Source of the DNA: Hydrolagus affinis
Lineage: Eukaryota
Reading direction: 5' to 3'
NCBI GenBank assembly: GCA_012026655.1
Contig: JAAILG010000504.1
Coordinates: 1 to 64,000 of the forward strand
DNA: 64,000 bases
Part shown: in pieces, positions 3,701 through 56,700 of the stretch
Numbering within the stretch: the stretch's first letter is position 1
How the letters are laid out: each line of letters opens with the position of its first letter
The notes under the pieces: generated by a model
Seen by the model: only the letters and a program-made list of their open reading frames with translations
What the model was told of the DNA's origin: nothing
Database searches by the model: none
Position numbers and translations under genes: made by a program

Positions 3701-6700
3701 AGGATGTTCTAGAATCTGCTGAATATGGCATGTGTGAGTGGTAAAACTGGAAAATGCTGGCTTTGTTTAATGTTAATCTTTTGCTGTGACTTTTCATCCA
3801 AATTGTTAGCCTTTGTACCTCCTTTTATCCTGATGGATCTGCTCTGCATTTTTATTTCCTATGTCAGTTGTGTTAATCATTTGATCTGGATTTTTATTTA
3901 GAAAATAACAACTATATAAATTTATGAGCGGCACCTCTCTGTACACAGCAAAAGATGATTGAGTGAACAACACAAAGTCAATAACATTTCAGATGATAAG
4001 CAAGTGTAGATTGAAGCAAATTATTTTATTTTCTGATGGTTGGCCAGTGCTTATTTCTGAATGTGTGGAGAATACCTTTCTTCGAAAAATTAAGATTCTC
4101 TCAATTAGGTACTTTTGAAGGGGATGGAATAGGTTATTTTTCTCACATCTGGTAAATTGAAATTTGTCTAGATTATTCCAATGTGTGTCAAAGAGGCTTC
4201 CCGTTATTTTGGACGAATAATAAGTCACAGAAAGAAGTGGCAGAACACCCCAGTTTCAATGGAGGAGGGATATCTGAAGATGTTGAAAGACCTGACTGAC
4301 TTCTTTGCAGATAAGAATCACAGACAACCAGCTAAACAACTGCAACTGTCTGCTCTTTATGGATTTGAGGACAGCACATATAACAGGTAAAAAGAGGCCT
4401 CTTTTGCAGCTATCAGCAAGACTCACTAACAGTAAAGAAACCTAATAAACATGTAGCAGATTAGGTTCTAAGAGGTGTTTTTCATTTTGGTATTTTGTAA
4501 ATATGTACTAGGAAAGCATGTGAAAAATAAGTAAATTGGTGCAATTTCATAAACTGTATAAACATTAATGTTTGTTAATGACATTTATTGAAAGAATTCT
4601 ATCAACATTATGTAAATAATTTGGCATTTTCCTCCCTGCCCTCAATCAATGGATTTCTGCCAATAAACTGAAAAAGTCCATTTGAACTGACCCTATTTGC
4701 CCACAGATTACATAGTCAATCCACTTTACAGTGAATCCTAAGGCAGTTTGTGTTTCTTTCTCTAGCCAGTTAAATGTAACTAGGATACAAACCAAATTTG
4801 AAGTTCAGGTTTTATCCTTTCCACGAATGACATGCATTTATAAATAATCCTTTAAACTTCAGAGATAGATATGAATGAGCTGTAAACCAAATTCACTTGT
4901 CTGATCTGTAGATCGGAATAAATTAGGTGATCTAAACCCACTTTTGATCACAGTATGGTCATTCTCTGCTGAGTGGTGTCCATGTGGATATCAGGTAAGG
5001 ATAGGATCAGACTGGCATAGAATCATAGAATCCTATGGCACAAAAGGAGGCCATTCAGCCCATCGAGTCTGTGCCAGCTCTTTAAAAAAAAGAGCAATTT
5101 AATCCCACTCCCCAGCTCTCTCCCCATAACCTTGCAAACCCGTCCTCCCCAAATAAATGTCTACCTCTCTATTAAAAGTTGTTACCTTTTCAGGCAATGC
5201 ATTCCAGATTCGAACAACTCGCTGAGTGAAAAAATTTCTCACCTCCCCTCTGCTTCTTTTTGAAACTATTTTAAATCTGTGACTACGAGTCACTGATTCG
5301 CCCACCAGTGGAAACAGGTTTTCCCTATCTACTCTGTCGAATCCCCACATGAACTTAAAAACCTCTATTAGGTCTCCTTGCAAATCTTCTGTGTTCCAAT
5401 GAGAATAAGCCTAGCCTCTCTAGCCTTTCCTCATAGCTGAAGTCCCTGACATCATGTCCATTGTTTGAATTATCCTCTAATGCTTATTGACTCAACTCCT
5501 TAACACCAACAATGCTTACACATATTTAGCACCTTCCATGCAGGATGTTGTCTCAGAGTGGCAGATCTTAATAGTGCGGAGCCTGACTCCTTAGTGAAGA
5601 ATGCCCACCCGAGTGAAGAAAAGAAAATCTAAAGACCTTGTTGAATTCTACTCCAGCAGGAATTATTATTGTCACACTGGGAGAGGTGAAGAAAACTTCA
5701 GTAGCATTTTTCTGTTGTGTTTTAAAGGGTGCAGTTAATATCATTGCCAAAGAAAGTGGACAGTGCAGCTTTCAACAATGTAGAAGTGAAGTATATCGAC
5801 AGTGGTCAAATGGCAATAGTCAGAGAGAACCAGCTGCTCCAGCTTCCTGCACACTTTCAGCTTTTGCCAACACAGGCTGTGGAATTTGTTTTATGTAGAG
5901 TGAAACCTATTGACAATGAAATGGATTGGAATCCACAGGTAAGCAGTGAAAGTTTAAAGAATACAGTAAAAGTCTGTTTATCCGTGACCCGAAAAACCAT
6001 AACTTCCGTATAACCGGCACCTCAAAAAAAAGGTCCCCATTCAATTAACCAGATCTTATCTGGCACAATTGCTGTGGTCCATTTAATGAGTCGATTGTTG
6101 CACTAGAGTACAGTATGATTAGTTCTGAATGCTGCCGGTAGTGCATTTCCGGTTTTGGGTCATAAAGGGGCACTGTTTTTCCTCCTTTTTCTCTCACTCC
6201 CTCTCTTTCCTTCCTCTTTATCTCTCCCTCGCTCTTTCTATCTCTTCCCCTTTCTTTCCCTCTCTCTCTGACGGATATTACATATTGTCTGTGTAGGCTG
6301 ACGATATCGTGGGTTTATACACTATTTTGGTGGGGGTGGGATGGGAGAAGGAGAGAGAGGCAGGGAGAGAAAGAGGGTGGGGGGGTGGGGGGGGAAGAAG
6401 GGGAGGGAAAAAGGATGGGAGGAGAAAAAGAGAGTGGGAGGGGAGAGAGAGAGGGGGTGAGTTGATTAATTTAGATGGAAAATGAGAGGAGTGGAGAGGG
6501 GTTGGGTTTGGAGCCATTGGGATACCAGACTGACTGAGTGTGTGTGTGAAAGAGAGAGAGAGGGAGAGGGAAGGAGGGAGAGAAAGAAAGGAAAAAACGG
6601 CAGTACAGCTTTAAGCCACTGCAGTCTGCCATTGTAGAAGTTTGCTTTGTGATTGTGTGCTGTGTTTATAGACTATAATCGATATTTATTGCTTTATTGT

Positions 6701-7913
6701 TAAGTATCCATACAATATTCTGTTATTATTTAGTCTATTATTAATATGGTATGTTTAAAAAATGTTAATTACTTTTTTTTAAAGTTATTTTTTTGTGTGT
6801 TGGGTTTTCGGCAGTTGGCCACCCGAATATCCTGCAGGCGGTTTAACTGGCATTTTCCAGGTCCCGAGGGTGCCGGATAAACAAGCTTTACTGTACTTGT
6901 TTTCTGATACTTGCAAGATTAATCATTTTTACTTCATTCCCATTAATTTCTGTTTTTGTGACACAGGAAAATCTTTTCTATTTGTTTTGTGTTATTATTG
7001 TTATTATTAACCAAAACTTAATGTCTGATTTTAAAAAGATTTCGAGATCTATCAAACAAAAAATCACTGGTAAACTACATGAAGCTAAAATTGTTCTTGC
7101 TGTTGGTAACACACTATGGCTGGATCCTGTGGTGAGCTGCTTGCTTTATCATTTACAATATTAATCTTCTGACTTGAATAAAGTGCTAAATATGTAAGAT
7201 TTTGTTATTTAATGTGTGTGGACTTTCTCTTTTGTATCTTAAGTTAGAACATTTTAACTGGCGATGTTGAATATATTGCAATATTAGAGAATTTCTATTC
7301 TTGTGGAACTTGTTTTTTTTCTTCAAATATTAAAAATAGGTCGCTTTAAAATGTAGAATTCTATATGCATTAAGAGTATACTGTTGTGTAGTTCTGAGGT
7401 ACCATATTTTTGTATATAATGCAATCCCAAACCAAATATTTATCAGCATGTTGTTATAACAACTTGTCTGTGTTACTAAGGTCCGTGTAATTAAGCTGGC
7501 GGATCTGAAAACTACAATAACTGAATATAACGTTCGCTCAGAGATCATGAACTCTGGATTTGGAACTGATAATCCAGAGCACATTGGAAAGCTAAAGTCA
7601 CTTTACGAGAGAGTGGATCCCAGTTTATCCAATGAGGATTCTCCCCAGAAGGAGTAGGTTGCTATGAAATTAACGCAACATTACAGTGTATTAGTTTCTA
7701 CACCATAAATCTTAATTTTAATTTTTTTTAATGTTAATCAATGGCATTAAAAATACATTTTTAAACCTGTGTAATTAATACATTTGTGAGGTCAACTCTG
7801 CTTTTAACTTTCCCCTCCCACTCAATTTATTCTGCAATATTAGGTCCCATCTGTAACACCTCATCACGAAAATGATCATGAAACCTTGAAACCTGTTTTT
7901 TGTTATTTTCTAC

Positions 7914-7944
<31 letters not shown>

Positions 7945-10900
7945 GCTCTGTGTTTTATGGAATAAAATTTATTTTCATTTCTTCATATTCTTTAACTCTG
8001 GTTGTGTCCAGCAACTTACTGTGAAATGTAGCCAAGATCAGAAACTCACTAGATAGGAGAAATTGTTGGATCAGAAATTCATCTTATTATCAGAGTGATG
8101 TAAACTTGACCTCCCCTACATTCATGTGAATTTTAAAAACACCAGATTCTGCAAATACAATTGTTAACTTGGCTGCCTCAATTTAGTTGGTTTACATTAT
8201 GTTCAAGGAAGTTATGAAATTAAACTTACTGCAGATGTTTTTTTTTTACAGACTCAACAGAAGAGAGCTAAAATTTGCTGTTCTGGAGGATAATGGAAAT
8301 TACCATTCAGTCATTATATCTGAATTTACCAACCCACACGACTTTTATGTACAACTTGTAGCAACTCAGAAAAAGTAAACAAATCTATGTTGTTGCAGAA
8401 ATGTGTTATTTCAAGTATTTAAATGTATTATATAGATTATGTTTTCTAAATTTCAACAACTGTTTTTGTTGCTAAATAGACTGTGTACTTTGGAGGATGA
8501 GATTAACCAAACTGCTATAGAAAAAGAGGAATTTATTTCACCAGCTGTTGGTGATTTGTGTTTGGCACTCAGTGGAACTGAGAAGAGGTAACTAATGTGT
8601 CTTATTGTCAGTATTTCCCCCCAAACTCTCCTTCCCTTTCCTCCCTTTACTGGGTGCATGGATATAAATCTTACACTGGACACTATACTGCCCTGGTCAA
8701 ACTCTCTAAACATCTGTGATCAGGGCTCTCTCTGCCTCCTTGATCCATCTGTTGCTTTCGACACTGTCGACCATTCCAGGGCTCTGTCCTTGGCCCCCTA
8801 TGCTTCAATATCTACATGCTCCCCATTGGTGTCGCAGACATGGGGTTAACTTCCACATGTATGCAGATGACACCCAATTCTATCTTTCTGCCTTGACCGT
8901 CGATTCCAGGACCACTGCTGCTCTGACAGACTTCCTGTCAGACATCAAATCCTGGATGAGAGCTAACTTTCTACCGCAGCTTACTGTGGAGACTCCAGCT
9001 CGGATCTGAAACATTGATTGTCCAGCGCCTTGGGACATCCTCCTCACATGAAAGGCGCTGTACAAATGTAATTTTGTTATTGTTAATCCTTTACTTTTCT
9101 GTATCAGTGCCTCTTTTGGTAACCCTTTTCATCTTTCACATTTTTTTAAAAAAATCGGAGGTGTTATAGAGGAAAGATCTTGTCATCTGCTGATACCAAA
9201 GGAGAATATCAGGTGTTCAATATGGATTCTGGGTCTTGCAATTGGGTTTCCCTGAACAAAATTAAACATTTTCCCAAAGCAGATTTTAACCTTCCTTTTC
9301 AGGTCAGTTCAATTGTTTAACTCAAATGTAAATTGAGTACCTGTACTGTAGATCGATTTTGAAAATGGTAACTTGAATTCTAACATTGGGTAAATATAAA
9401 ATAAACTTTCAATCATGAACATCTTTACCAACAATTCTCAATAGGATAAGAATTCTGGTGCCTTTTGACACAAAGTTTTAAATTGGCTAATTATTGAAAA
9501 TGTATATTTATTAATCAACTACAAATTCGCTTTTTTTTCAACTATTTTCTGCTATTTTGGAAAGTATTATGTTTAGCTATATAGGATAATATGTAGGTTT
9601 GGGAAAATGATTAGTAAAAACTATACCTGTTTTATATTGCAGGCAATCTGGTGTTCTCTGTATGGAATAGAGCATGTGGGAGAAAGCTGGGAGCTGGAGA
9701 CTAACAAAGCCATGCAGATCACCTTTAAGGGCAAGGAACTTCAAGCTAAAGTTATCAAACAAAGTAAAAATGCTGAAAGTGAGTTAATATTAATTGACAA
9801 CACCCACACTTTTGTTTTTTAAATTCTGATTAGACTAAAGTGTTTTTCAACTTAACCGTAAAATTGCTTGCTCAATATTCAAATAGTTGCAAAATGTGCA
9901 GATTTTCTTGACTTCAAGGGGGGGAAAAAATATATATTTTTAAATGGTCTTAATGGCATATGGTAATACTTAAGTTTGTAATAAAAGAATGAATATTGTA
10001 CTAAACAGCTGCACATGTCCTAGTTTTAACTTTTGATTGGATAAGTCCTGAAATTGATAGTGTAGCAAACTGCAATAATTTTTTTTCAATAAAATAATGA
10101 ATGATGTTATTAATGCATGTCTTAAGGCTTTTTAAAAATCCTTTTGTAGCTTGTGCAGTGTGTTACCATGTGGATATACAAGATCTTTCTAATGCAAGTT
10201 TTGTGAAGCTATCAGAATGGATTATTTCTAAAGGACATGGTCGAGGGATTCCTACAACTTTAAATCAGCTATTCCCTGAAGCAGCAAATAGTCAAAGCAA
10301 CTCGGTTGCAGGCCTGTGTTCTTCAGTCTATGCTCTTTTAGGCGATAAAAATTGTAAGTGCATATATGAATGTCAAATTGATAAAATACCTTTGATGCTA
10401 ATTTTAAGAGCTGAATAAATGTGAAAATTTTATTTTAAAGCCTCCTCATTAAGGGGAACAATAGTGGAAGAGATAAAAAACAAAGTGCTGCAATACCCGG
10501 TGGATTATACGTCAGAATTGGGTGATATGCGCTACATGTGTAGGCTGCTGAGATTCTTGCATGCACCAAAAGAACAAGCTGATTTAGTAGCTGCTATAAC
10601 ATATATGGCAAAGCTGAATATAAGGTGAGCCTATGTATGAGCCTATGCAGAACAAGGTTTAATTGATTGCACAATGCGGGTTTTGCATTGCAGTAACACA
10701 AGATGGCAGTAAAGTTGCAGTATAATTCTGCCAAACTCATGCTGAGTGTTAGACGATTGTGTGTTTATGTAGAGCTGAGCTTGTGGTCGAAGAGAAAAAG
10801 AGCATAAAACTTGTAAAAAATATATATTTTTAAATCCATTGGGAAAGTCAATTCAAAAGTTTCTCCTGCTTTAGCCTTTATCAGCTATACAGGCAGATTC

Positions 10901-13900
10901 ACTCTGAACTGGATATCGGTCTGTGGACATTTTCTTTGATAATTTTACATAGGTGCCTAGGAAAATTAAGCCCTACTTTCAGAGGTTAATAGATAATTGA
11001 TCAATACCTATTTACAAATTTTAAATCATTTTGATGCCTAGAAATTCATGGTTTTCTACTAGCCTGAAATGTAATTAATCCAATACAATCTTGCACTTAA
11101 ATGTTTTTGCTACATTGTAATTTCTAAATTTTTTAATATAATATTAAAATTAGGAGACTTTCATTTCAGAAAACTTGATGAAATCATAGAAGAAAAGGGA
11201 ATTTACACCCTTGTGAACCTTCTTCACGGTGAGACAGAGTCAATTTATGTTTAACAACAACAACTTGTATTTATATAGCGCTCTCCTTGCCAGTCGGCGT
11301 CTCACAGCGCTTCACAATGCTGGAGCCCAAGGCCAAGCCAGGAGGAGAGGGAAGGTGACCGTAAGTGCGGTCGAAGAGAAAGTTCTTCAGTTGCGACCTG
11401 AAGATAGGAAAGGAGGGGGTGAGGCAAGGGGGTTGAGGGAGGGAGCTGCAAAGTTTTGGGGGTTAGTGGCTGAAAGCATGGCCACCAATGGTGTAGTAGA
11501 GGATTTGGGAGATAAGGAGGCCAAATCCGTAATGGATACTGCTGTAAAGAGAGTAGAGGTTAGAGAGGTAAGGGGGTGCAGGGGAGTGGATGGATTTAAA
11601 CATGAATGAGGAATTTAATCTTTAAAATTTTATGTAAATATCTATTCACCCTCTTCAGAGCTTTATTCAATGTTATAATTTAAATTTGACAGGAAAGTGC
11701 TGATTGAACACATTTTCATATGATTTTTCCCTTGGCTTTAGGGGCAACTGATGCAATGTTACAAGAATCTATTTGTATTGCACTTGGGATTCTAACAGAA
11801 AACAGTGAATTGCGCTCAGCTATTGCTGACACTGATGTATTGAAACACTTATGTTGGTTATTAAAAACACCAGCTAAAGATAAAATATGGGAAGCTGCTG
11901 TTGGAACATTGGCTGCACTTCTTTTCTCAGACAGGTATAAAGAACGACTGTTGGTACTGTGCTAATAGAATAATAATTAAAAGGCTTTAAAATTATGAAA
12001 CAAAATCATCTTGCCTCAACACAGTTAGGACTATTTTTTTTTAAATTATGCAAACAAAAAACTTACCTTGATATTCTTCCTCCCGATTCCATACTGAGTG
12101 TGGAACTGTATTGTCAAATATTTTCAGACTACAGTATATTTATCTATATAATCTAACACAAGAGGGAGAATTTATTTCAAAAGATAAGCTTCCATTAGAG
12201 CAGGAAGTCGTTATAACAATAATAAGTCATTGAGTTCTCTGAAGTTCTCTTTTTGTGCTCTTTTAACTAGTAATTTTTTTTCTTGTTGCCATCTAAACAT
12301 TTGCTTCTAAGAATTGAGCTGCACAGTACACTATCTTTACAACTAGTACAAGAAAGCAAATTGTTTTCCCATCCCTACATCCACATAGAAAGAAGTATAA
12401 TTATTCTTACCTACAGGTTAATAAGTGGCATAAAAGCTATTTTTTAACCAAAGTTCTAAAGATAGCAGAGCCATATGCAGTATTTGCCTATTATTTGGTG
12501 TTTTTTCAGCAGCTTATCTCAAATGATTTTCTGAGAGTGTCATTCATTATTTATATTTTATATTTGGGAATTAGGGGAATTAATGTTAACATTATACTGT
12601 AATTTGACAATGATTTTCTAACACCATATGCTATTTCATGCACATATTTATACATGTACTAAGCCTAGTACTTTCGCAGGGCTTGTACAGAGGTTGAAGA
12701 CCAACAGATTATTGGGCATCTTTGCACAAAGCTTCATGAATCTGCGACAGGAGAGGTATAATCAGACTGTTCAACTGTACTAAACTTGTGAATTATAAGC
12801 ATTGTTCAAGTTTCTAAAACTTGTGTCTTGTATGAGTTCTGTGCTGTATGACAATTTAGTGTGTTCCATTCATGACCTAAATTGTAGTGGCATTATAGTT
12901 TAATGCATCTCAATGTATTTAATTCAAAAATACAGCATGAAATTTTTAAAAATCCTAGTTCATAACTAGTCACAGAGTGTAATTTAAGTTAAAACTTATT
13001 CTTAGGTTTTGGAAAATCTTCTGAGAACCTTGTGTCATCTGAGTGGTAAACCACAGAATTTGAACTTGATGCTGGCAAGTGAACTTAATTTGACTGTTGA
13101 CTGGTATGTATTGCAACAGTCACAAAAAATGTAAGTGATTTTTACTGTAGACATTCTATAAACCAAGGAAAATATAGTAAAATAAATTAGATGTAACACG
13201 TTGTGCATTAATTGTAACTAAGTAAACTCCATTAAAATGTAACTATTAAACAATGCTTTCTTCAATATTTTTAGGCTTTTATCAAGTAAACCTTGCCAGG
13301 ATGTTTCATCCACACTCATGAGTAATTTGAAATTTTCTCTGGCAAGTTTAAATTCTGCACAGCAGTACCTGGAAAATGATACAGCCCTCAATCAAGAAAA
13401 TTCTGGTATGACTTTACAAGAATGTGATTATGTTATAACTGTAATGTAGTTTAATTTCTGGTAGATTTTTGAAACAGTGTATATCTTACCAATAGATATG
13501 GCATTAGTAGTGCTAATTACATCTACATCTTTACTGTTTTATTTAAACAACTGCGTTATTCACATTTGGCTGTGCTCACCTCTAAGTTGTAAATTTGAAA
13601 GTACTTTTAATAGTCTAAGACTTGGTGGCCAACCTTTTTGGAAACTAAATACAAGTTCTTTGAATGCAAAATAGGAAAGTATTTGTACCTATATCTTTGC
13701 TATTTGGTAGCTGTTTGAAAAGGCCTTCACTGGCATTTTATTTCCTGCATATTTAAGTAAAAGATATTTTATAATGTGAGCCAAAGTTATTTGTAACGAT
13801 GATTGGTGAATTCTAATAATAATGTTTCCATTTGTTAATACGCTTTTCACATCTTCTAGACGTCTCAAAGCACTTTGCAGAATATACTATAAAGTGAACT

Positions 13901-16843
13901 GACTGTATTTGTGGGCGAAATGCGGCAGCCAGTTGCACACAGCCATGTCCCACAAAGAGTCATGGATTAAAATGACCAGTTTTATTATTCTGTATTTTAT
14001 GGAGGGATTATTATTAGGCGTGTGGAGTAAGAAAACTTGCTTAAGGTTTTGCTCTCACCTGCATGGATTCGAACACAGTTCTCACGCTTGTATGGCGAGT
14101 ACTCTAACCACTGAGCTACTGGACTCCACAAGAAGTAGCTGATTAAAAAAATCGGAGCTTTTTAAAATAAAACAGGTGTTGATAGCAGAGCATCAATACT
14201 GAATACATCCATGATAGTTACAGAAAGACATCACTGGAAACTAGTCTTTCATCCTCTTAATTTCATAAATAAATCTGTTAGATTCAAATTTATAATTGAA
14301 TCTGTCAAGTTATTCTCCTCTTTCCCGAAAATGTTACTGGAATAAATGTGATCAGTTTACATATGTACATTTTCTCCTTCATTTTCTGAACAGGTATTAT
14401 GGATGCCACTAGAAAGAGGACTAGCCAATCAAGTATGGATCACAAGAGGTCATCCTTTATACTTAAATGTTAATACGTTATAATCATTGTTGCAATCTAC
14501 AAGTATCAAGCTTGTTCACTAAGCTTATTGGACAGTCTGTTTAAATTTGATGTCTTTGATATATTTTTGCAGTTTTCACCCTAAAATAACCTGGTTTCAA
14601 AAAGAAGATTGTCTTGTTTTAAATATCAAGCTACGAAATTTTGCGCAACATGTTTGTGAATTCAGTAGATACAGACTGGTGTTCAGGTGAGGTTGAAGAG
14701 GTATTGAATTACGTATGCAGAATTGTATTTCTGGTTACATTTTTGACCGATAATATTTTTGACACCAAATATTTAAATTGTAGTGCCTTTGTTGGTGACA
14801 AATTGTACCTAGCAGATTTGGAACTTCAAGGCTGTATTTTAGAAGACAAATGCACATGTGTCATTAGAAGTGAAGAGCCTGTCATAACATTGTGCAAAGA
14901 AGAAAAAGGTGCATGGAAGAGTCTGCTAACATCAAAGGTAATTGTAGTGAAATAATTCAGTTGTCTTCTTTGCTGTCATATACAGAATCATGATCGTTTA
15001 CAAATTTTACACAAGCATTCAATTCTAAATTGATTTCCCATTCCTATTAGTGCAATAGAACCTCACTAATCCAGTCACACAAGGACCTGGGCAAAAGTGA
15101 CTTACTTCATCGAATTATACAGCACAGGAGGAGGCCATTTGGCCCAACGTATCTGCTAGCTCTTTTAAAAGAGCTATGCAAATCAATCTTGTACATTCCT
15201 ATAGCTCAGTGGTTAGAGCACTTGCCTTGCAAGCGAGAGACCTGGGTTCAATTCCAACCTTGGCCAAGTTTCCTTACTCCGCACGCCTGATAATACCTTG
15301 AGAAAAAAATAATAAATTGGTCATTTCAATCCACGACTGTTTGTGAGACACTGCTGTATGCAATTGGCTGCCGCGATTCACCCACAAATATACAGTCAAT
15401 ATAACTTTGTAAAGCGCTTTGAGACATCTAGAAGACGTGAAAAGCGCTATATCAAATACAAGGATTATTATTGATCCCTTTCCCCCGTTCTCTCCCCATA
15501 ACCCAGGAAACATGTCCTTCCCAACTTACTTCCTACTTCGTGAGGTGACCTGATTACTGAAACAAAAGGTGGTTCAGGTCACTGACGTAATGTTAAAGGG
15601 CATTGGTAATTGGCAAGGGTGATCAACATTCAACAACCATAATTTGCAATCTCATTAAAATAACGCTATTGTCACATCTAAAACAAAAGCTGTCATGTAT
15701 TCAGCCTACCTTTTGAGAATGCGTCCCACTTGTGTTCTGTCAATGGCATAGATCACAGCTAACTGTCTATGACTTGCCCTCACTTGTTTTTGATTAAGTC
15801 CACTCTCACGTAAGGACAACTCCTTCTGGGATGCCTGTTTGCAACACTTGTCAACAGTCACTAAATCAAAACAATGCACAGACAAGCCCTGTGCTCTGAA
15901 TACAGTACTTACCAAGAATTGGCCGCAGTAGCTCAAGTTAAGCCGCGGAAGCCGGACAAGGTTGAATTTCAACTCTAGCCGCTTCCACGATCCCACGTGA
16001 CCGGAGCCCACAGTAGCAGCTTTGGGGAAACAGCACAAGAAGCCAGAGGCCTAGCTCTCTGTGTACTGTACAGGTTGGTAGAGGACAAGGGTGTTTGTAC
16101 TGCATTTTTTAAGGGCAGGAGATGAAAATGTATTGAGCAGGGACTGCAAAATAGGGAAAACAATTCTTGTATTTCTGTATAATTGAATTCCAAGTCTCAA
16201 GAACTGAGATAATATAAAAAGCAATAAATGGTTTTAATTTCTGTTTTCATCTGTTACTTTTCTTCAGAATCCAAATGTCACTTTTGATTTTAATTATTTT
16301 GAGGATTTGTCTGATGAATCGTTTCTTCCAATATTTAAAGGTAAGATGTGATTTAATTACCACTTCTGTCCAGAATAAAACTTTCTTCACAATTCATTTT
16401 TCCAACGGCATGTCAATTCTTGATTTGTAATCCACATTAAAAGTACTATTTTTCCTCCTCCCAGAACTTGAAACCTAATATTTACAGAAACTGTACATCT
16501 AATAAAGTAGAGCCATGTTATAGTGCAGATTTGCTTATAGAGCAATTGGTGCAGTTACAACAAATCTAAAATAATCATGCTTCCCTCCCCTACCCCGTTC
16601 TCAGTTCGGGTCTGAAGCAGTAACTGTCCAGCGCCTTGGGACGTCCTCCTGACGTGAAAGGCGCTATACAAATGTGATTTTGTTGTTGTTATTTGAACTT
16701 TAAAACTTACAAAAATAACTGCTTGTTTTTCTAATTAATTATTAACAGACACTTGGAAAGGGTCCCAGACCATGATAGAACCTTCTGTTGATGAATGGGG
16801 CTGCATTACCAGTAGTAGTGACAGTTCTGAAGAAGATTACTAA
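738..16843 (+). CDS. TDRD12: Tudor domain-containing protein 12 (piRNA pathway DEAD-box-like helicase/Tudor/CS protein), 5'-partial, 25 exons in window
   Basis: GT-AG exons with consistent phases: 738-866, 1971-2088, 2394-2533, 3075-3271, 3516-3618, 4172-4386, 5728-5938, 7039-7131, 7481-7653, 8252-8374, 8480-8587, 9161-9302, 9643-9778, 10150-10353, 10441-10624, 11170-11228, 11742-11934, 12680-12755, 13006-13103, 13275-13405, 14394-14448, 14573-14686, 14784-14937, 16268-16340, 16749-16843 (TAA). Recognisable TDRD12 peptides: [32 protein letters not shown] (helicase C-terminus), [33 protein letters not shown], and CS domain [12 protein letters not shown]...[16 protein letters not shown]...NPNVTFDF. 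Adjacent to SLC7A9 and CEP89 as in other vertebrates. Confidence 0.93.
1077..1406 (+). mobile_element. tRNA-derived SINE with Deu-like core and L2-like tail (family A, full length)
   Basis: A-box GGCTCAGTGG, B-box GTTCGAATCC, core TGTTTGTGGGACACTGCTGTGTGCAATTGGCTGC, tail GTGAAAAGCGCTATATCAAATGCAAG(ATT)n. More than 12 related copies in the window. Confidence 0.85.
2745..3013 (+). mobile_element. SINE, long variant of family A, 5'-truncated
   Basis: Shares the core and tail with family A, plus the extra AGTAGGAACC...GTTAG segment also seen at 21269-21640 and 41250-41505. Confidence 0.7.
5020..5450 (-). mobile_element. CR1 LINE 3' end
   Basis: [20 protein letters not shown]...[16 protein letters not shown] is the CR1 ORF2 C-terminus. 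Terminal (CATAGAAT) repeats. A closely similar copy lies at 34540-34965. Confidence 0.9.
5964..6893. mobile_element. non-autonomous Tc1/mariner-superfamily (Tigger/pogo-like) DNA transposon
   Basis: Imperfect TIRs CAGTAAAAGTCTGTTTATCCG ... CGGATAAACAAGCTTTACTG, flanked by TA on both sides (5962-63, 6894-95). Confidence 0.75.
7914..7940 (+). repeat. (CT)n microsatellite
   Basis: about 13 CT units. Confidence 0.9.
8620..9085 (+). mobile_element. L2 LINE fragment (RT remnant plus 3' tail)
   Basis: Peptides [13 protein letters not shown] and [17 protein letters not shown] (RT YADD motif). Tail CAGCGCCTTGGGACATCCTCC..GAAAGGCGCTGTACAAATGTAATTTTG. Confidence 0.85.
11250..11620 (-). mobile_element. 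L2 LINE 3' fragment
   Basis: (AAC)n plus TTGTATTTATATAGCGC tail on the reverse strand. Similar to 26565-26990 and 34060-34300. Confidence 0.7.
13814..14130 (-). mobile_element. SINE family A, full length
   Basis: Reverse complement of the 1077-1406 element, with A/B boxes at 14065-14125. Confidence 0.85.
15110..15520. mobile_element. CR1 3'-end fragment (-) split by a family-A SINE (+, 15196-15472)
   Basis: GGAGGCCATTTGGCCC...AGAGC before the SINE and CCCCCGTTCTCTCCCCATAACC after it continue the CR1 end seen at 5040-5135. Confidence 0.7.
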
Positions 16844-16925
16844 AAGAAATCAGGTGATGGGTCTATTATGAAAACTCTTGCCTGTCAATACTTGAATCCT
16901 GTAATGGTACTCTTAAAGTTTTAAG

Positions 16926-16931
16926 AATAAA
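16926..16931 (+). terminator. candidate polyadenylation signal of TDRD12
   Basis: AATAAA about 83 nt after the TAA stop. Confidence 0.4.
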
Positions 16932-18408
16932 AAATTAGGCTGATTTTATGTCCAGTCACTGTTTAATATTTTGTGAGAAATCCAATAATTGAAATTGCAC
17001 ATTGCTGAAGGTTTTGCCATCTATTTGATTGATCCATCCCATCTTCCATTCTCCTTCTCAATTTGAATGAATCATTGTGATTTATGCTACATTGCATTGA
17101 AGTGCAGCCTTGATAAACGATGACAAAAAATGTAATTGTGTCCTCATTGGTAATTTTACAGCTTGAGTATAATCACAATCCAGTCACTTGATAATGATGT
17201 TAACAGCAAAACAAAACTAAGATTTAGATAAATTCTGCTCTGATACTTTCACAGTAGCAGATGTGTTTCTTTTCTCATTTTGCTATAAATCTCACTTGAG
17301 GGGCTTATCGACAATGTTTTGATTCATGCACTCAAATTGAGACAAGTCTATTTTGAGTGTTAATTCTTGCTGTACTTTGCATATTGATCTCAAACAAAAA
17401 AAAACTTTCCGACCTTTTTTGTTATCAAGTCCAATGAGTCTTGATAATGCCAAGTTTTTTTTAGATAACTTTTATTGGGGGTTGATGGGGAAGGGAAGAG
17501 AGAGGGGGAAATGAAAACACTGATTTTGCATTTCAGGCAACAAGACAGTGACTGGTAGTTATAGAATAAAAGAGCTTGCTCCAAACCAGATATTGTTTGT
17601 TTTCAAGTGTCTAAACCCACAGACCTGCACTTGAAATTAAAAAGCCAGCTGTCTAAGCAAGTAAAATACAGCCCCATTGTTTGGGAATGACTTGCAGTAT
17701 TTTATAATGGCATCTCTTAGTAAGGAATCCACAAAAAAATGATGACTGAACTGAGCACGGTATACATGGTAGCTCGCTAATATTTTTAACCTATTTACAA
17801 GCACAGCAATCAATGTAAATGCCAAAAATAATCAATTGTGAGAAAAACATTTTAATCAAAATTATCCCAAATTAATGGTCATTTAGTTGAATTTCTAGCG
17901 CTGTTATTGTATGTCACAAATCTGTTGCTTAAACCATCGGTTGTACTGTAAATTATATTGACAAAAAACAGTATTAATTAGAATTCTGAACCCATTAAGT
18001 TCAAGAATTTAACTTGAGGTGAAACTAATTAAGGATGATAAGAGCAAAACATCTAAGAGCTCAGCCTCTATTTACAAGAAAGTATTTAGCTATTTACAAT
18101 GATGGTAATTATTGCAGTACATGAGTATCAATACAGGGCACAATACAATGATGTTGGTAATTGTAAGAGATCCAAGTCTTAACCATACTTGGAAAAATAA
18201 TTTGAACAGAAAATTACATAGTGTACTACTGGATGCTGCTTTGTACCTCGGAGGTTTTAGTTGTAGAGCTGTATTATTGCAATTCCAAGATGACGTTGAT
18301 ATCAATCTCTTTATTTTTAAAAATGTTTTGAAAAGCCTCCTCTGATTTCTCTTCCTTTTCCTTCATTGAATAGCAGCAAGTAGTCTAAAAGTAAACCAAT
18401 GTGTACTT

Positions 18409-53700: not shown

Positions 53701-56700
53701 ATACGTCACTGCTTAACTATCTATGCTAAGGACAGCACTTTAAAAATGCAGTACTTCCCCCATATTTCATATTAGTTGTAAATATCATGGCATTTACACA
53801 CACAAATCATCTAGATCATCTATTGCACCACATACAGAAACAACTCAATGAACTTCCAATTTGGTGAGGTCATTTTCTTACCCTGCGTATTCCTATGAGT
53901 AGGTTCTATATTTGGAATTTGTCATTGAGCAGTATTTGCAGTCATGTGCACATTTCAGCAACTGGAAGCAAAATGCACTTCCTAATGCAAATCAGCTATT
54001 TTTAAGCAATAACATTTTGACCCTGGAGATTATAGACATTTAATGAACTTTTAAGCTCTCAAAGGTTGGAGATGCCGGAATTAGATTCCCACATTTGCTT
54101 CAAATTAAAATGTGTAAAGTGAGAGTTCTATAGTGGAGAATTAAATTTGAAGCAGTTGACAAGAATGAATCCAGCAATTCTAGCTATAGTATAGGATATG
54201 TTCCCGTTTCATTCAATGATCCAAAATAGCTTGTGAGTTTTCAGACTAGAATTTGATTGGATTTTGGTTTCATAACACACTTTCCTTTCTTTCCCCAGTA
54301 TGAATTAAAGATGAGCTGCCCTCGCATTGAAGGGGAGGAAAAGATTTCCAGTGACGAACTGGAATGCAAAATTTGCTACCAAAGATACAATGGCCACAGT
54401 CGGAAGCCCAAGATCTTGGTTTGTTTGCACAGAGTTTGTGTAAGATGTCTGAACAAAATTCTCGACATAAGTGACAGCACCCACAGCATTAGCTGTCCGT
54501 TTTGCCGCCATGAAACCGAAGTCCATGAAGATCAAATTGCTGGTCTCCCTGACGACGCAAACATCATGTCCAAACTTCTGGTCAGGGAAAGACCAACGTG
54601 GAATTCAGACTCCAAAGAGGTAGTTTTGACACCCAAAAATTTGACTTCTTCCAGTCCAACCCATGGGTCTTCTAATTGTTTAGTTATTACCATAATGGAG
54701 GTGCAAAGGGATTCCCCAAGGACTCCAAACAGGAATAACAACTCTGATTATTACTCACATCGCAGTCTTGACTCACCATCCATTACATCTCAAAGCCGAA
54801 TTGATCAAGACTTGTTCTCTAAAGTTTGTAATCATGTACCAAAAATACTATTGTGGTTGCTGGGCTTTTTCTACTTTGGCTCATTACCTCTTGGAATTTA
54901 TCTTCTAGTGATCCAGAAAGTGACCCTGGGGATTGTGAGCCTCAGTCTCGTTCCTTCCAGTCTGACTGTGTGCTTGGTCTATGGATTTTGTCAATGCCTC
55001 TGTCAGGGTATATGTGATTGTTCACCCAGAAGCTAATTGGTACTGCCGAACAGTTCAGCAAAGTCACAGATTCAGCAAGAACCTGAAGTTGATGTTTGTG
55101 ACTGCAGGTATCTGGAGAATAAAATAACTGCTGACTTCAGATCCGGTTTTACATTTTGTTCTGTCGATACATCCAATCGATAATTCAATATCAATGCTCC
55201 TCAAAGAGAAAAATATATTTTTTAATCACTATCTTTCTAATTGATTTTTTTGGATCATCAATAAAAACATTTTGGATTATTAAATGGTAATTAAGTTAAA
55301 TAAGAACGCATTTCCTTTTTTTTATGAATTCAGTAGATTAGTCATTTAGTCACCTGGAAAGCCCTGTTTATCTTAAGTGTGCTCACAGTTGGAATACAAA
55401 TATCACTACAGCTGTCCATATGGTATTCCATTGATACCACATGCTAAGTAACCTCAACATGTGGATCAAATGGCATGTACATTATCCTTTCACGATTGAT
55501 TAGTTATAGAATTTAAGTTTTTGTTCTAATCATATTCCTTATTTCAGTTTATGAAGAGCATCCTCAAAAATCAACAAATAACAACACTGGATGTGGCATA
55601 AAATTCCATTTTCATAATCAAATCAAGAACCAAATGCATCAAGAAAACTGAATTTATGTGTGTATGCGCCCTTCCCTTGTTGTTATGAACGTTATCTGTC
55701 AGTGTATAAATGTAAAGTCATATACATCAATTCCAATTTTTTCAATATTAACTTGTTGACTGTAACGCTGCTCAAGCAATCACCTGCTAACATAGTGAAT
55801 GGAACAGTTTCTCTAATAAAAGAGAAATCTGGAAGATCAGAGTTTACCAGTTATGATGACAGCTTATTTTCTGCTTCTCTGTATAGTTGCAATGGTACCA
55901 ATATTCATCTGTGTAATTGTTTGAGAGGCATTTCAAAGCATTTTTAGATCAGTAGTTTCCACATGCCTTGATGCATTTGCAATTACCTGAGCAATGTATT
56001 GAAAATTAGTTGGTTAATTGTGCAGTAAACTCTGGATAACTCGATGCTGGCTTAACTCATTACTATTACTTAAGTCGTTATGCCAGCAATCTCTCGGCGG
56101 CTTCCCATATAACCTATCACTAAGAGACATGGCTTTCCTCGTCACTCCACTTAACATGCTACTCGCCACATTGTGGAAATTATTGTAAGCAATTACAATA
56201 TAAAATAGGTCAGATAACTCACATATTTATATATATATATACACACACACACACAATATATGTGACTGGTGCGGGTGTTTGCTGGAGGTTGCATCAGGTC
56301 TAATGGAGGGTTGCGCTATGGCTACCCGCCCTCTCCTTTCACAGACCTCTGTGATGCACTGGAGAATACACATCCAACCTCCGCCGTGCACTAATACCCC
56401 GGTGTCACAGGTGCTCGGCTGAGATTCAGTACACACGCTCAGATCACAGAGGTTTCTGGTCTATTGCAGGGCTGTGCCAGGGCTTCCTGCCCTTCCCTGT
56501 GACTTGTACACTGTGCACTGTGGATATTTCTCACTATTAGTCATTGCTTTAGTATGTAAATGCTTTGTTGTTTGTGTGCTACTTTTAAAGGGGTTTAGGA
56601 CAGTGACATATTCAAATAAAACTAGAAAAAATATTTTCCATTAGAAATGTAGACTGCAAATTCCCATCAATAATAGAATGTTTGTGAAGTTAAAAATAAC

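What the first reader, a model, noticed from the sequence alone, without database searches (positions are those of the whole stretch)
10441..13405. Armadillo-like repeat array spliced into TDRD12, a domain not expected in this piRNA factor
Seen in sequence: six phase-compatible GT-AG exons (10441-10624, 11170-11228, 11742-11934, 12680-12755, 13006-13103, 13275-13405) splice in frame between the Tudor region and the CS domain with no stop. The joined peptide has helical units [14 protein letters not shown] / [14 protein letters not shown] / [14 protein letters not shown] / [14 protein letters not shown] / [14 protein letters not shown] spaced 43, 42, 42 and 42 aa apart. Each unit is followed by an H3-like helix ([36 protein letters not shown]). 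Established knowledge: a 42-aa period with this pattern is the ARM-repeat signature, and mammalian TDRD12 is described as Tudor-helicase-Tudor-CS with no ARM domain. Inference: this lineage retains or gained a protein-interaction solenoid in TDRD12, which could recruit a piRNA-pathway partner absent from the mammalian TDRD12-EXD1-PIWI complex.
Basis: partly seen in the sequence, partly recalled or inferred. Interest (0 to 1): 0.85.

Follow-up and report, generated by a model that had tools for sequence, protein, structure and literature searches.

The report
Armadillo repeats inside chimaera TDRD12
The germline transposon-defence gene TDRD12 of this cartilaginous fish really carries six expressed exons that encode a five-repeat armadillo domain, which bony vertebrates appear to have lost.

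Summary
All six exons have AG/GT borders and are phase-compatible. Translated one by one, they align end to end with residues 1327-1572 of Callorhinchus milii TDRD12 (P0001), 212 of 242 residues identical, with exactly one residue left at each split codon. The motif spacing is 43, 42, 42, 42 aa.

The domain is a true ARM array. The Pfam Arm match on the orthologue is above threshold. A profile of ten cartilaginous-fish sequences finds only ARM proteins in the PDB. An AlphaFold model matches beta-catenin at Z 21.3.

Stranded RNA reads cover the exon-bearing bins at about the depth of the flanking Tudor and CS exons and leave the repeat-free introns empty. Splice joints themselves were not listed.

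The domain is found in 20 of 20 cartilaginous-fish TDRD12 proteins and in 0 of 100 bony-vertebrate ones. Coelacanth keeps a 34-aa piece colinear with exon 5 (0 of 10,000 shuffles reach its score). This points to an ancestral jawed-vertebrate domain that bony vertebrates lost.

RefSeq models and precomputed Pfam hits already show the domain. I found no paper describing it. Its function as a docking scaffold is inferred, not shown.

The parts
10441..10624 (+). ARM exon 1 (184 nt, enters in phase 1 and leaves 2 nt over). It encodes the short link from the third Tudor region and the first repeat (H2/H3; model helices 20-30 and 34-50).
   Evidence: AG/GT borders and a single open frame. 54 of 60 residues identical to P0001 1327-1386. 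RNA depth on the sense strand.
11170..11228 (+). ARM exon 2 (59 nt): H1 and H2 of repeat 2.
   Evidence: AG/GT borders and a single open frame. 16 of 19 residues identical to P0001 1388-1406. RNA depth cannot be judged because its bin is swamped by a neighbouring SINE. At 19 aa the peptide was too short for a Pfam search.
11742..11934 (+). ARM exon 3 (193 nt): H3 of repeat 2, all of repeat 3, and the start of repeat 4.
   Evidence: Pfam Arm E 0.0019, 18.6 bits. Designed ARM proteins in the PDB, E 1e-5. 54 of 63 residues identical to P0001 1408-1470. RNA depth.
12680..12755 (+). ARM exon 4 (76 nt): H1/H2 of repeat 4.
   Evidence: AG/GT borders. 23 of 25 residues identical to P0001 1472-1496. 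RNA depth.
13006..13103 (+). ARM exon 5 (98 nt): H3 of repeat 4 and the first helix of repeat 5. It is the counterpart of the 34-aa remnant in coelacanth TDRD12.
   Evidence: 30 of 32 residues identical to P0001 1497-1528. Coelacanth P0025 1153-1186 matches profile positions 164-196 at 16.7 bits, and 0 of 10,000 shuffles reach that score. RNA depth.
13275..13405 (+). ARM exon 6 (131 nt): the last long helix of the array, then a poorly conserved tail predicted with low confidence.
   Evidence: 35 of 43 residues identical to P0001 1530-1572. Model pLDDT falls below 50 from model residue 229. The tail is 36% identical among cartilaginous fishes, against 57% for the array. RNA depth.
10149..10353 (+). 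Upstream flanking TDRD12 exon (end of the third Tudor region). Its GT donor lies at 10354, and its last base plus the first two of exon 1 form a Ser codon, as in the orthologue.
   Evidence: tblastn with P0001, sequence read, RNA depth.
14390..14937 (+). Downstream TDRD12 exons: linker exon 14390-14446 and CS-domain exons 14571-14684 and 14782-14937.
   Evidence: tblastn with P0001 residues 1572-1680. CS domain at P0001 1594-1666. RNA depth.

Best explanation
The six exons are constitutive coding exons of TDRD12 in a chimaera-like cartilaginous fish. They encode a solenoid of about 210 aa made of five armadillo repeats, followed by a roughly 35-aa flexible tail. The solenoid sits between a third extended Tudor domain and the C-terminal CS domain.

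This module is shared by all cartilaginous-fish TDRD12 proteins examined and evolves as slowly as the Tudor and CS domains. It was most likely already present in the last common ancestor of jawed vertebrates. Ray-finned fishes and tetrapods then deleted it together with the third Tudor domain. Coelacanth still keeps the third Tudor domain and one exon-5-like remnant.

Inferred mechanism, not shown: the solenoid is a protein-docking surface that adds a binding site to the TDRD12 scaffold of the piRNA-biogenesis granule, next to the CS domain that targets the protein to nuage. It does not carry the Trp/Asn ladder of importin-alpha, so it probably does not bind NLS-type basic peptides.
For: Exon structure and reading frame.

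ARM identity:
- Pfam Arm 28.8 bits (cut-off 20.6) and ARM_ARMC5 E 1.4e-8 on orthologue P0001.
- Exon 3 alone gives Arm at E 0.0019.
- With the ten-species profile A1, all 52 PDB hits at E<=1 are ARM proteins, best 2.4e-15.
- The AlphaFold model built on A1 has pLDDT 71-91 over residues 21-170 and regular three-helix triplets.
- Foldseek returns 222 hits at E<=1e-3, and all 30 rows shown are ARM-type repeat proteins (27 designed or engineered, 3 of them labelled only 'Engineered Protein', plus one ciliary doublet-microtubule chain), with TM about 0.6.
- VIA-align gives Z 21.3 to beta-catenin over 214 residues at rmsd 3.2.

Expression: in three stranded RNA runs, reads lie only in the orientation expected for + strand RNA. 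They fall in exon-bearing bins. In X3, depth scaled to exon length is about 5-8x for ARM exons 1, 3, 4, 5 and 6, against about 7-11x for the flanking Tudor and CS exons. The four repeat-free intron-only bins are at or near zero (the scaling is my arithmetic).

Distribution: 17 of 17 database hits to the ARM region are cartilaginous-fish TDRD12. 20 of 20 stored cartilaginous-fish proteins match it and 0 of 100 bony-vertebrate proteins do. P0001 residues of about 1080-1560 have no counterpart in bowfin, paddlefish, turtle, duck, gharial, platypus or mouse.

Constraint: 56.9% identity between chimaera and nine elasmobranchs, against 56.5% for Tudor 3, 62% for CS and 36-39% for linkers.

Ancestry: coelacanth P0025 has three Tudor stretches and a colinear 34-aa piece that scores 16.7 bits on profile positions 164-196. 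None of 10,000 shuffles reach it (maximum 8.0). Its best match in 17 of 20 cartilaginous-fish proteins is the same exon-5 stretch, while the best score in 97 other bony-vertebrate proteins is -1.9.
Against: - No splice-junction read was seen. The joints table was filled by SINE-driven joints (1987 rows not shown), so inclusion rests on depth and on orthologous gene models.
- Exon 2 could not be judged in RNA.
- The tissue and species labels of the RNA runs are coded.
- The structure was predicted for the Callorhinchus orthologue, not for this window's own protein, because the exons were not joined.
- The ancestry argument rests on one 34-aa piece in one coelacanth gene model.
- No jawless-vertebrate, lungfish, bichir, gar, teleost or amphibian sequence was examined: only the best 120 of 486 hits were listed, and only 8000 candidates were scored.
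- The single invertebrate TDRD12 seen (P0129, a midge) lacks ARM. This fits a gain at some point in vertebrate history but does not date it.
- Nothing here bears on what the solenoid binds.
- Some shark and ray gene models lack exon pairs 2+3 or 4+5, so the array may be shortened or alternatively spliced in some lineages.
Confidence: 0.75

Rival explanations
1. The ARM array is a gain of the cartilaginous-fish stem lineage (exon shuffling into the intron before the CS exons). On this view the coelacanth piece resembles exon 5 by chance or by convergence of amphipathic helices.
For: 0 of 100 bony-vertebrate TDRD12 proteins carry the array. The insect TDRD12 P0129 lacks it. Published architectures for mouse and Bombyx are Tudor-helicase-Tudor-CS (PMC4712191, passages read). 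The coelacanth match is short (34 aa, 16.7 bits).
Against: The coelacanth piece lies exactly between the third Tudor domain and the CS domain, as exon 5 does, and aligns end to end with profile positions 164-196. It beats all 10,000 composition-matched shuffles by more than 8 bits. It picks the same stretch in 17 of 20 cartilaginous-fish proteins. Coelacanth also shares the third Tudor domain with cartilaginous fishes, so the block next to the array was certainly ancestral.
Confidence: 0.13
2. The exons are real but are cassette exons used in a minor or tissue-specific isoform. On this view the main product is the short Tudor-helicase-Tudor-CS protein, as in mammals.
For: The whole block is 741 nt, so skipping it keeps the frame. 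Exons 2+3 (252 nt) and 4+5 (174 nt) are also in-frame units. Stingray and manta models (P0018-P0020) lack the part matching exons 2+3, and P0017, P0022 and P0023 lack the part matching exons 4+5. Splice joints were not shown.
Against: In the three RNA runs, length-scaled depth over ARM exons is about 5-8x in X3, against about 7-11x over the flanking constitutive exons. That is not a minor share. Purifying selection is as strong as on the Tudor and CS domains. Full-length arrays stand in the models of 11 species (10 in A1 plus Scyliorhinus isoform X3).
Confidence: 0.08
3. The array belongs to a separate nested ARM-repeat gene, or is an annotation fusion, and is not part of the TDRD12 protein.
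For: None specific. Automatic gene models can fuse neighbouring genes.
Against: The exons lie between exons that are TDRD12 by homology to bony vertebrates (Tudor upstream, CS downstream). They have no start or stop of their own and are phase-matched to both flanks, with split codons giving the orthologue's residues. They are on the same strand and at the same RNA depth as the flanks.
Confidence: 0.02

Closest known systems
TDRD12 of mouse and Bombyx (the PIWI-EXD1-TDRD12 complex factor; Drosophila Yb/BoYb/SoYb named as relatives in PMC12147562)
   Same: It is the same gene. The exons for helicase C-terminal part, Tudor and CS are colinear. Cartilaginous-fish and bony-vertebrate proteins are 44-51% identical over residues 380-1000. 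Both have a DEAD-box core flanked by Tudor domains and a C-terminal CS domain (PMC4712191 passages). The neighbours SLC7A9 and CEP89 are named in first-reader notes; I did not test this.
   Different: The cartilaginous-fish protein is about 400-500 aa longer. It carries a third Tudor domain and the five-repeat ARM array between Tudor 2 and CS. P0001 residues of about 1080-1560 have no counterpart in seven bony vertebrates compared.
Canonical armadillo-repeat proteins (beta-catenin, importin-alpha, plakophilin/p120, Vac8, SPAG6/PF16, designed consensus ARM proteins)
   Same: Period of 42 aa. Three helices per repeat in the model. Sequence-profile matches: designed ARM 2.4e-15, PF16 3.4e-5, importin alpha-3 7.5e-5, p120 2.6e-4. 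Structural matches: Z 21.3 to beta-catenin, 20.4 to Vac8, 19.9 to plakophilin 2.
   Different: There are only about five repeats, embedded in a helicase/Tudor protein. In the alignments, the H3 positions that hold Trp and Asn in consensus ARM repeats (as printed in those alignments) are an invariant Cys and a Gly in repeat 2. That these two positions form the peptide-binding ladder of importin-alpha is recalled, not tested. An importin-alpha-like mode of peptide binding is therefore not expected. No single natural ARM family stands out as the donor.
Coelacanth (Latimeria chalumnae) TDRD12, P0025
   Same: It keeps the third Tudor domain (best Tudor stretch 1041-1155) and a 34-aa piece (1153-1186) colinear with exon 5 of the array, directly before the CS domain.
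   Different: It has no counterpart of exons 1-4 and 6 in the annotated model. 34 aa cannot form an ARM solenoid.

Membership tests
Armadillo (ARM) repeat family, Pfam PF00514 / ARM clan | Tandem repeats of about 42 residues | tested here: met
   Unit starts at codon offsets 22, 65, 107, 149 and 191, giving spacings of 43, 42, 42 and 42. The same spacings occur in P0001.
Armadillo (ARM) repeat family, Pfam PF00514 / ARM clan | Match to the family profile above the curated threshold | tested here: met
   Orthologue P0001: Arm 28.8 bits against a cut-off of 20.6, at residues 1390-1425; also ARM_ARMC5 E 1.4e-8, which is below that model's own cut-off. The window's exon 3 alone gives 18.6 bits, just under the cut-off. 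The best-scoring repeat is split between exons 2 and 3, and the exons were not joined.
Armadillo (ARM) repeat family, Pfam PF00514 / ARM clan | Three helices (H1 short, H2, H3) per repeat, stacked into a right-handed alpha-solenoid | tested here: met
   The AlphaFold2 model of the Callorhinchus region with a ten-sequence alignment shows triplets 52-60/63-73/77-90, 94-101/105-114/119-132 and 136-144/148-157/161-175, plus partial repeats before and after. Foldseek probability is 1.00 to ARM proteins. VIA-align gives Z 21.3 to beta-catenin. This is a prediction on the orthologue, not a solved structure.
Importin-alpha-type peptide-binding ARM proteins | Conserved Trp/Asn ladder on H3 helices that binds basic peptides (feature recalled from the literature) | tested here: not met
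   In the alignments to consensus ARM proteins, the Trp and Asn positions of repeat 2 are an invariant Cys and Gly in all ten cartilaginous-fish sequences. Only one invariant Trp (model residue 122) and one invariant Asn (166) exist, and they are in different positions.
TDRD12 orthologue group | DEAD-box helicase core flanked by Tudor domains, with a C-terminal CS domain | tested here: met
   The window's exons are colinear with P0001 residues 633-1704. P0001 has TUDOR x3, DEAD, Helicase_C and CS. The N-terminal third of the gene lies outside the window.
TDRD12 orthologue group | Conserved chromosomal neighbours (SLC7A9, CEP89) | not tested
   Named only in first-reader notes on this window. 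That human TDRD12 has the same neighbours is recalled, not checked.

The most novel reading that the evidence does not exclude
The ARM solenoid, together with the third Tudor domain, is an ancestral built-in docking module of jawed-vertebrate TDRD12 for a nuage or piRNA-biogenesis partner. When bony vertebrates deleted it, that contact was either dropped or handed to a separate protein. If so, pull-downs with the shark or chimaera ARM domain would reveal a TDRD12 partner, or a step of PIWI loading, that is hidden in mouse and fly.
Probability: 0.15. Interest if true: 0.7.

Novelty: new variant of a known kind. Interest (0 to 1): 0.5.

Why it matters
TDRD12 is essential for secondary piRNA biogenesis in mice (stated in PMC4712191 and PMC8535693, passages read). 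Its known parts each have an assigned role: the helicase binds EXD1, the second Tudor domain binds PIWI, and the CS domain localises the protein to nuage (PMC4712191).

A well-conserved extra interaction domain in the oldest living jawed-vertebrate lineage shows that the scaffold was once larger and was trimmed in our own lineage. This gives a concrete handle, an isolated and foldable domain of about 210 aa, for finding additional partners of the complex. It is also a clean example of staged domain loss: full array in cartilaginous fishes, a single-exon remnant in coelacanth, nothing in tetrapods and ray-finned fishes.

It does not overturn anything known about the pathway, and databases already carry the gene models.

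Tried and rejected
1. Searching the exon 3 peptide against 1.84 billion representatives gave one true relative (P0001). The three other hits (P0002-P0004) are unrelated repeat proteins and were set aside.

2. The ESM Atlas search gave only ARM-type clusters at score 0.88, which the tool itself rates as a lead only. I used it as weak agreement and nothing more.

3. A possible second remnant in marsupials (profile positions 104-130 against P0035, P0030 and P0029) was rejected. Its scores are negative (-1.9 to -3.0 bits), and by eye the stretch looks like the end of the second Tudor region.

4. Apparent alignment of tetrapod linkers to the tail of exon 6 was rejected as over-extension from the conserved motif just before the CS domain. 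Identity upstream of that motif is at noise level.

5. The third protein-database search (Tudor 3 plus ARM) scored only 8000 candidates and did not even return coelacanth. It says nothing about other lineages.

6. dN/dS could not be computed because no orthologous nucleotide sequence was available. I used protein identity per domain instead.

7. Literature. 'TDRD12' with 'armadillo' gave 3 papers. I read the passage of one (an unrelated ARMC4 mention). The other two I saw only as listings and abstract starts (butterfly oogenesis; a Drosophila gurken screen). 'TDRD12' with 'ARM repeat' gave 0 papers. 'TDRD12' with shark, coelacanth, cartilaginous or Callorhinchus gave one paper with TDRD12 in the 15 rows shown of 4,080 (the rest not seen), a LINE1 review with nothing on architecture. 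PMC12147562 lists TDRD12 with DEAD/DEADH only and has no 'armadillo'. Supplementary files were not opened and could hold domain tables that I did not see.

8. The Rfam scan of 7000-17000 found only a tRNA-like SINE head.

Full report
**What is in the sequence.** Their lengths (184, 59, 193, 76, 98 and 131 nt) add up to 741 nt. The only frame that stays open through each one is the frame demanded by the running phase; exon 4 alone is also open in a second frame.

I translated each one separately and aligned it to the closest database protein. [quoted passage not shown] I found it with the exon 3 peptude alone and it is named. The six peptides fall on residues 1327-1386, 1388-1406, 1408-1470, 1472-1496, 1497-1528 and 1530-1572. 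One residue is left free at every split codon and none at the single phase-0 junction, and 212 of 242 residues are identical. The proposed splicing therefore reproduces the orthologue without any insertion or deletion.

A tblastn of P0001 on the window shows the rest of the gene in colinear exons. These run from residue 633 (738-869) to residue 1704 (16217-16339). Tudor-region exons end at 10353, and linker and CS exons follow at 14390-14937. The window thus holds the C-terminal two thirds of TDRD12 of a holocephalan related to Callorhinchus but not identical to it.

- Exon 3 alone hits Pfam Arm at E 0.0019 (18.6 bits, cut-off 20.6) and designed armadillo proteins in the PDB at E 1e-5.
- On the intact orthologue, Arm reaches 28.8 bits and ARM_ARMC5 E 1.4e-8. 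It also has three Tudor stretches, DEAD, Helicase_C and CS.
- I built an alignment of this region from ten cartilaginous fishes (A1; 77% mean column identity). As a profile it finds 52 PDB sequences at E<=1, all armadillo proteins. Designed ARM scores 2.4e-15, PF16 3.4e-5, importin alpha-3 7.5e-5, p120 catenin 2.6e-4 and RAP1GDS1 3.6e-3.
- AlphaFold2 on A1 gives an all-helical model (mean pLDDT 69.4, pTM 0.66; pLDDT 71-91 over residues 21-170). It shows three clean short-medium-long helix triplets, a two-helix partial repeat before them, and two more helices after them. A low-confidence tail follows from residue 229.
- Foldseek finds 222 PDB chains at E<=1e-3, led by designed ARM proteins (TM about 0.6, rmsd 3-4 A over about 205 columns).
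- The Foldseek-independent VIA-align search puts beta-catenin first (Z 21.3, 214 residues, rmsd 3.2). It is followed by Vac8, plakophilin, p120, KAP3, APC and PF16.
- The Atlas neighbours are ARM clusters too, but at lead-only scores.

The fold evidence is for the Callorhinchus sequence, which is 88% identical to this window's exon peptides.

**Is it expressed and included?** One run holds the DNA (X1, contigs contiguous across introns, about 1.7% different). Three stranded poly-A RNA runs of a coded organism were offered. I laid them on 10100-16050 at 88% likeness. Outside SINE-bearing bins, the RNA reads lie only with the first mate on the minus strand, the orientation expected for + strand RNA.

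| Bin (X3 depth) | Content | Depth |
|---|---|---|
| 10100-10696 | upstream exon and exon 1 | 4.1-5.6 |
| 11692-11890 | exon 3 | 3.8 |
| 12687-13084 | exons 4 and 5 | 2.5-3.1 |
| 13284-13482 | exon 6 | 4.8 |
| 14279-15074 | linker and CS exons | 3.1-4.6 |
| 12090-12487 | intron only | 0 in all three runs |
| 10896-11094 | intron only | at most 0.26 |
| 13483-13681 | intron only | at most 0.14 |

A further intron-1 bin, 10697-10895, has 0.82 (X2) and 1.04 (X3); X1 depth there is about 477, so it is probably repeat-derived. Scaled to the exon bases in each bin (my arithmetic), ARM exons stand at about 5-8x and flanking exons at about 7-11x. The array is therefore in most transcripts.

Two limits apply. 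Exon 2 lies in a bin swamped by a SINE. The joints table was filled by repeat-driven joints (1987 rows not shown), so I saw no splice junction directly.

**Who has it?**
- A database search restricted to the ARM region returned 17 proteins, all TDRD12 of sharks, skates, rays, sawfish and the chimaera.
- A search with the helicase/Tudor-2 region listed the best 120 of 486 hits. These were 20 cartilaginous-fish proteins (1431-1810 aa) and 100 bony-vertebrate proteins (985-1531 aa). ARM-type Pfam hits are precomputed for 13 of the 20 and for none of the 100.
- Local phmmer and profile searches over the 123 stored proteins confirm this. All 20 cartilaginous-fish proteins match. One (basking shark, P0021) matches only the first 58 residues, three lack the part of exons 2+3, and three lack the part of exons 4+5. 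No bony-vertebrate protein matches the array.
- Pairwise BLAST shows that P0001 residues of about 1080-1560 (third Tudor domain plus array) have no counterpart in bowfin, paddlefish, turtle, duck, gharial, platypus or mouse. In these species only 56-100 residues separate Tudor 2 from CS.
- A midge TDRD12 (P0129) has no ARM either.
- Within cartilaginous fishes the array is as conserved as the neighbouring domains: 56.9% identity chimaera versus elasmobranchs, against Tudor 3 56.5%, Tudor 2 63.1%, CS 62.1% and linkers 36-39%.

**Gain or loss?** Coelacanth decides the direction, as far as it can be decided here. Its current RefSeq protein (P0025, 1319 aa) keeps the third Tudor domain. Between that domain and the CS domain it has 34 residues (1153-1186) that align end to end with profile positions 164-196, which is exactly the product of exon 5 (13006-13103).
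- The score is 16.7 bits. None of 10,000 shuffles of the piece exceeds 8.0.
- Searched back, the piece picks this same stretch as best match in 17 of 20 cartilaginous-fish proteins. The other three lack it in their models.
- It scores at most -1.9 in 97 other bony-vertebrate proteins.

The block 'Tudor 3 + ARM' was therefore most probably present in the common ancestor of jawed vertebrates. It was removed at least twice (ray-finned fishes, tetrapods), with coelacanth caught half-way.

**How it probably works.** Shown: it is a folded, constrained, expressed ARM solenoid located next to the CS domain. Taken from the literature (PMC4712191, passages read): in Bombyx the helicase core binds the Lsm domain of EXD1, the second Tudor domain binds the PIWI protein Siwi, and the CS domain is needed for nuage localisation. 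Inference: ARM solenoids are protein-binding surfaces, so the array most likely adds a further docking site to this scaffold. The H3 positions that carry the Trp/Asn peptide-binding ladder in consensus and importin-type repeats are Cys and Gly here. An NLS-like ligand is therefore unlikely. I rate the docking function at about 0.4 and have no evidence for any particular partner.

**Known or new?** The gene models and automatic Pfam hits are public. In the searchable literature I found no description of an ARM domain in TDRD12 (supplements not seen). Published architectures list Tudor, DEAD-box and CS only. I file this as a new variant of a known kind: a known piRNA factor with an undescribed, ancient, lineage-retained interaction domain. 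Interest is moderate.

**Earlier notes of this scan.** Note s1-908389 proposed an additional extended Tudor domain at 8252-10353. My results agree that a third Tudor domain exists and add that coelacanth shares it. Note s1-908363 names SLC7A9 and CEP89 as neighbours, which I did not test.

Noticed in passing
window 13102 and 13310: At two conserved positions the window differs from all other cartilaginous fishes. The split codon starting at 13102 reads Trp where nine of the ten aligned sequences have Arg (one has Ser); the DNA run X1 has A there, which would give Arg. Codon 13309-13311 reads Ser where Tyr is invariant; X1 and all 6 of 6 RNA reads have A at 13310, which gives Tyr. These may be private alleles or assembly errors.
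   Followed up: partly
P0018-P0020 (stingray, manta) and P0017, P0022, P0023 (sharks): Some gene models lack exactly the part encoded by exons 2+3 (252 nt, two repeats) or by exons 4+5 (174 nt). Both are in-frame units. This could be real shortening, alternative splicing or annotation gaps.
   Followed up: no
window about 11250-11600, 13700-14250, 15080-15480: These are copies of a very abundant tRNA-derived SINE in TDRD12 introns. Read depth there is thousands-fold higher in DNA and RNA runs, many opposite-strand joints link the copies, and Rfam finds a tRNA match at 15202-15257 (34.4 bits).
   Followed up: partly
P0025 (coelacanth TDRD12) residues 1041-1155: Coelacanth keeps the third Tudor domain that other bony vertebrates in the sample lack. 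This bears on the scan's separate note about an extra Tudor domain at 8252-10353.
   Followed up: partly
window 54257-55033 (+): An intronless 259-aa open frame with a RING finger (Pfam zf-RING_5, 28.0 bits against a cut-off of 27.9). It lies between minus-strand coiled-coil exons that may belong to CEP89.
   Followed up: partly
window 6050-6670: A purine/pyrimidine-rich low-complexity tract that gives long open frames on both strands, rich in Gly/Glu/Arg or Ser/Leu/Pro. It lies in the intron after the Tudor exon 5726-5944.
   Followed up: no
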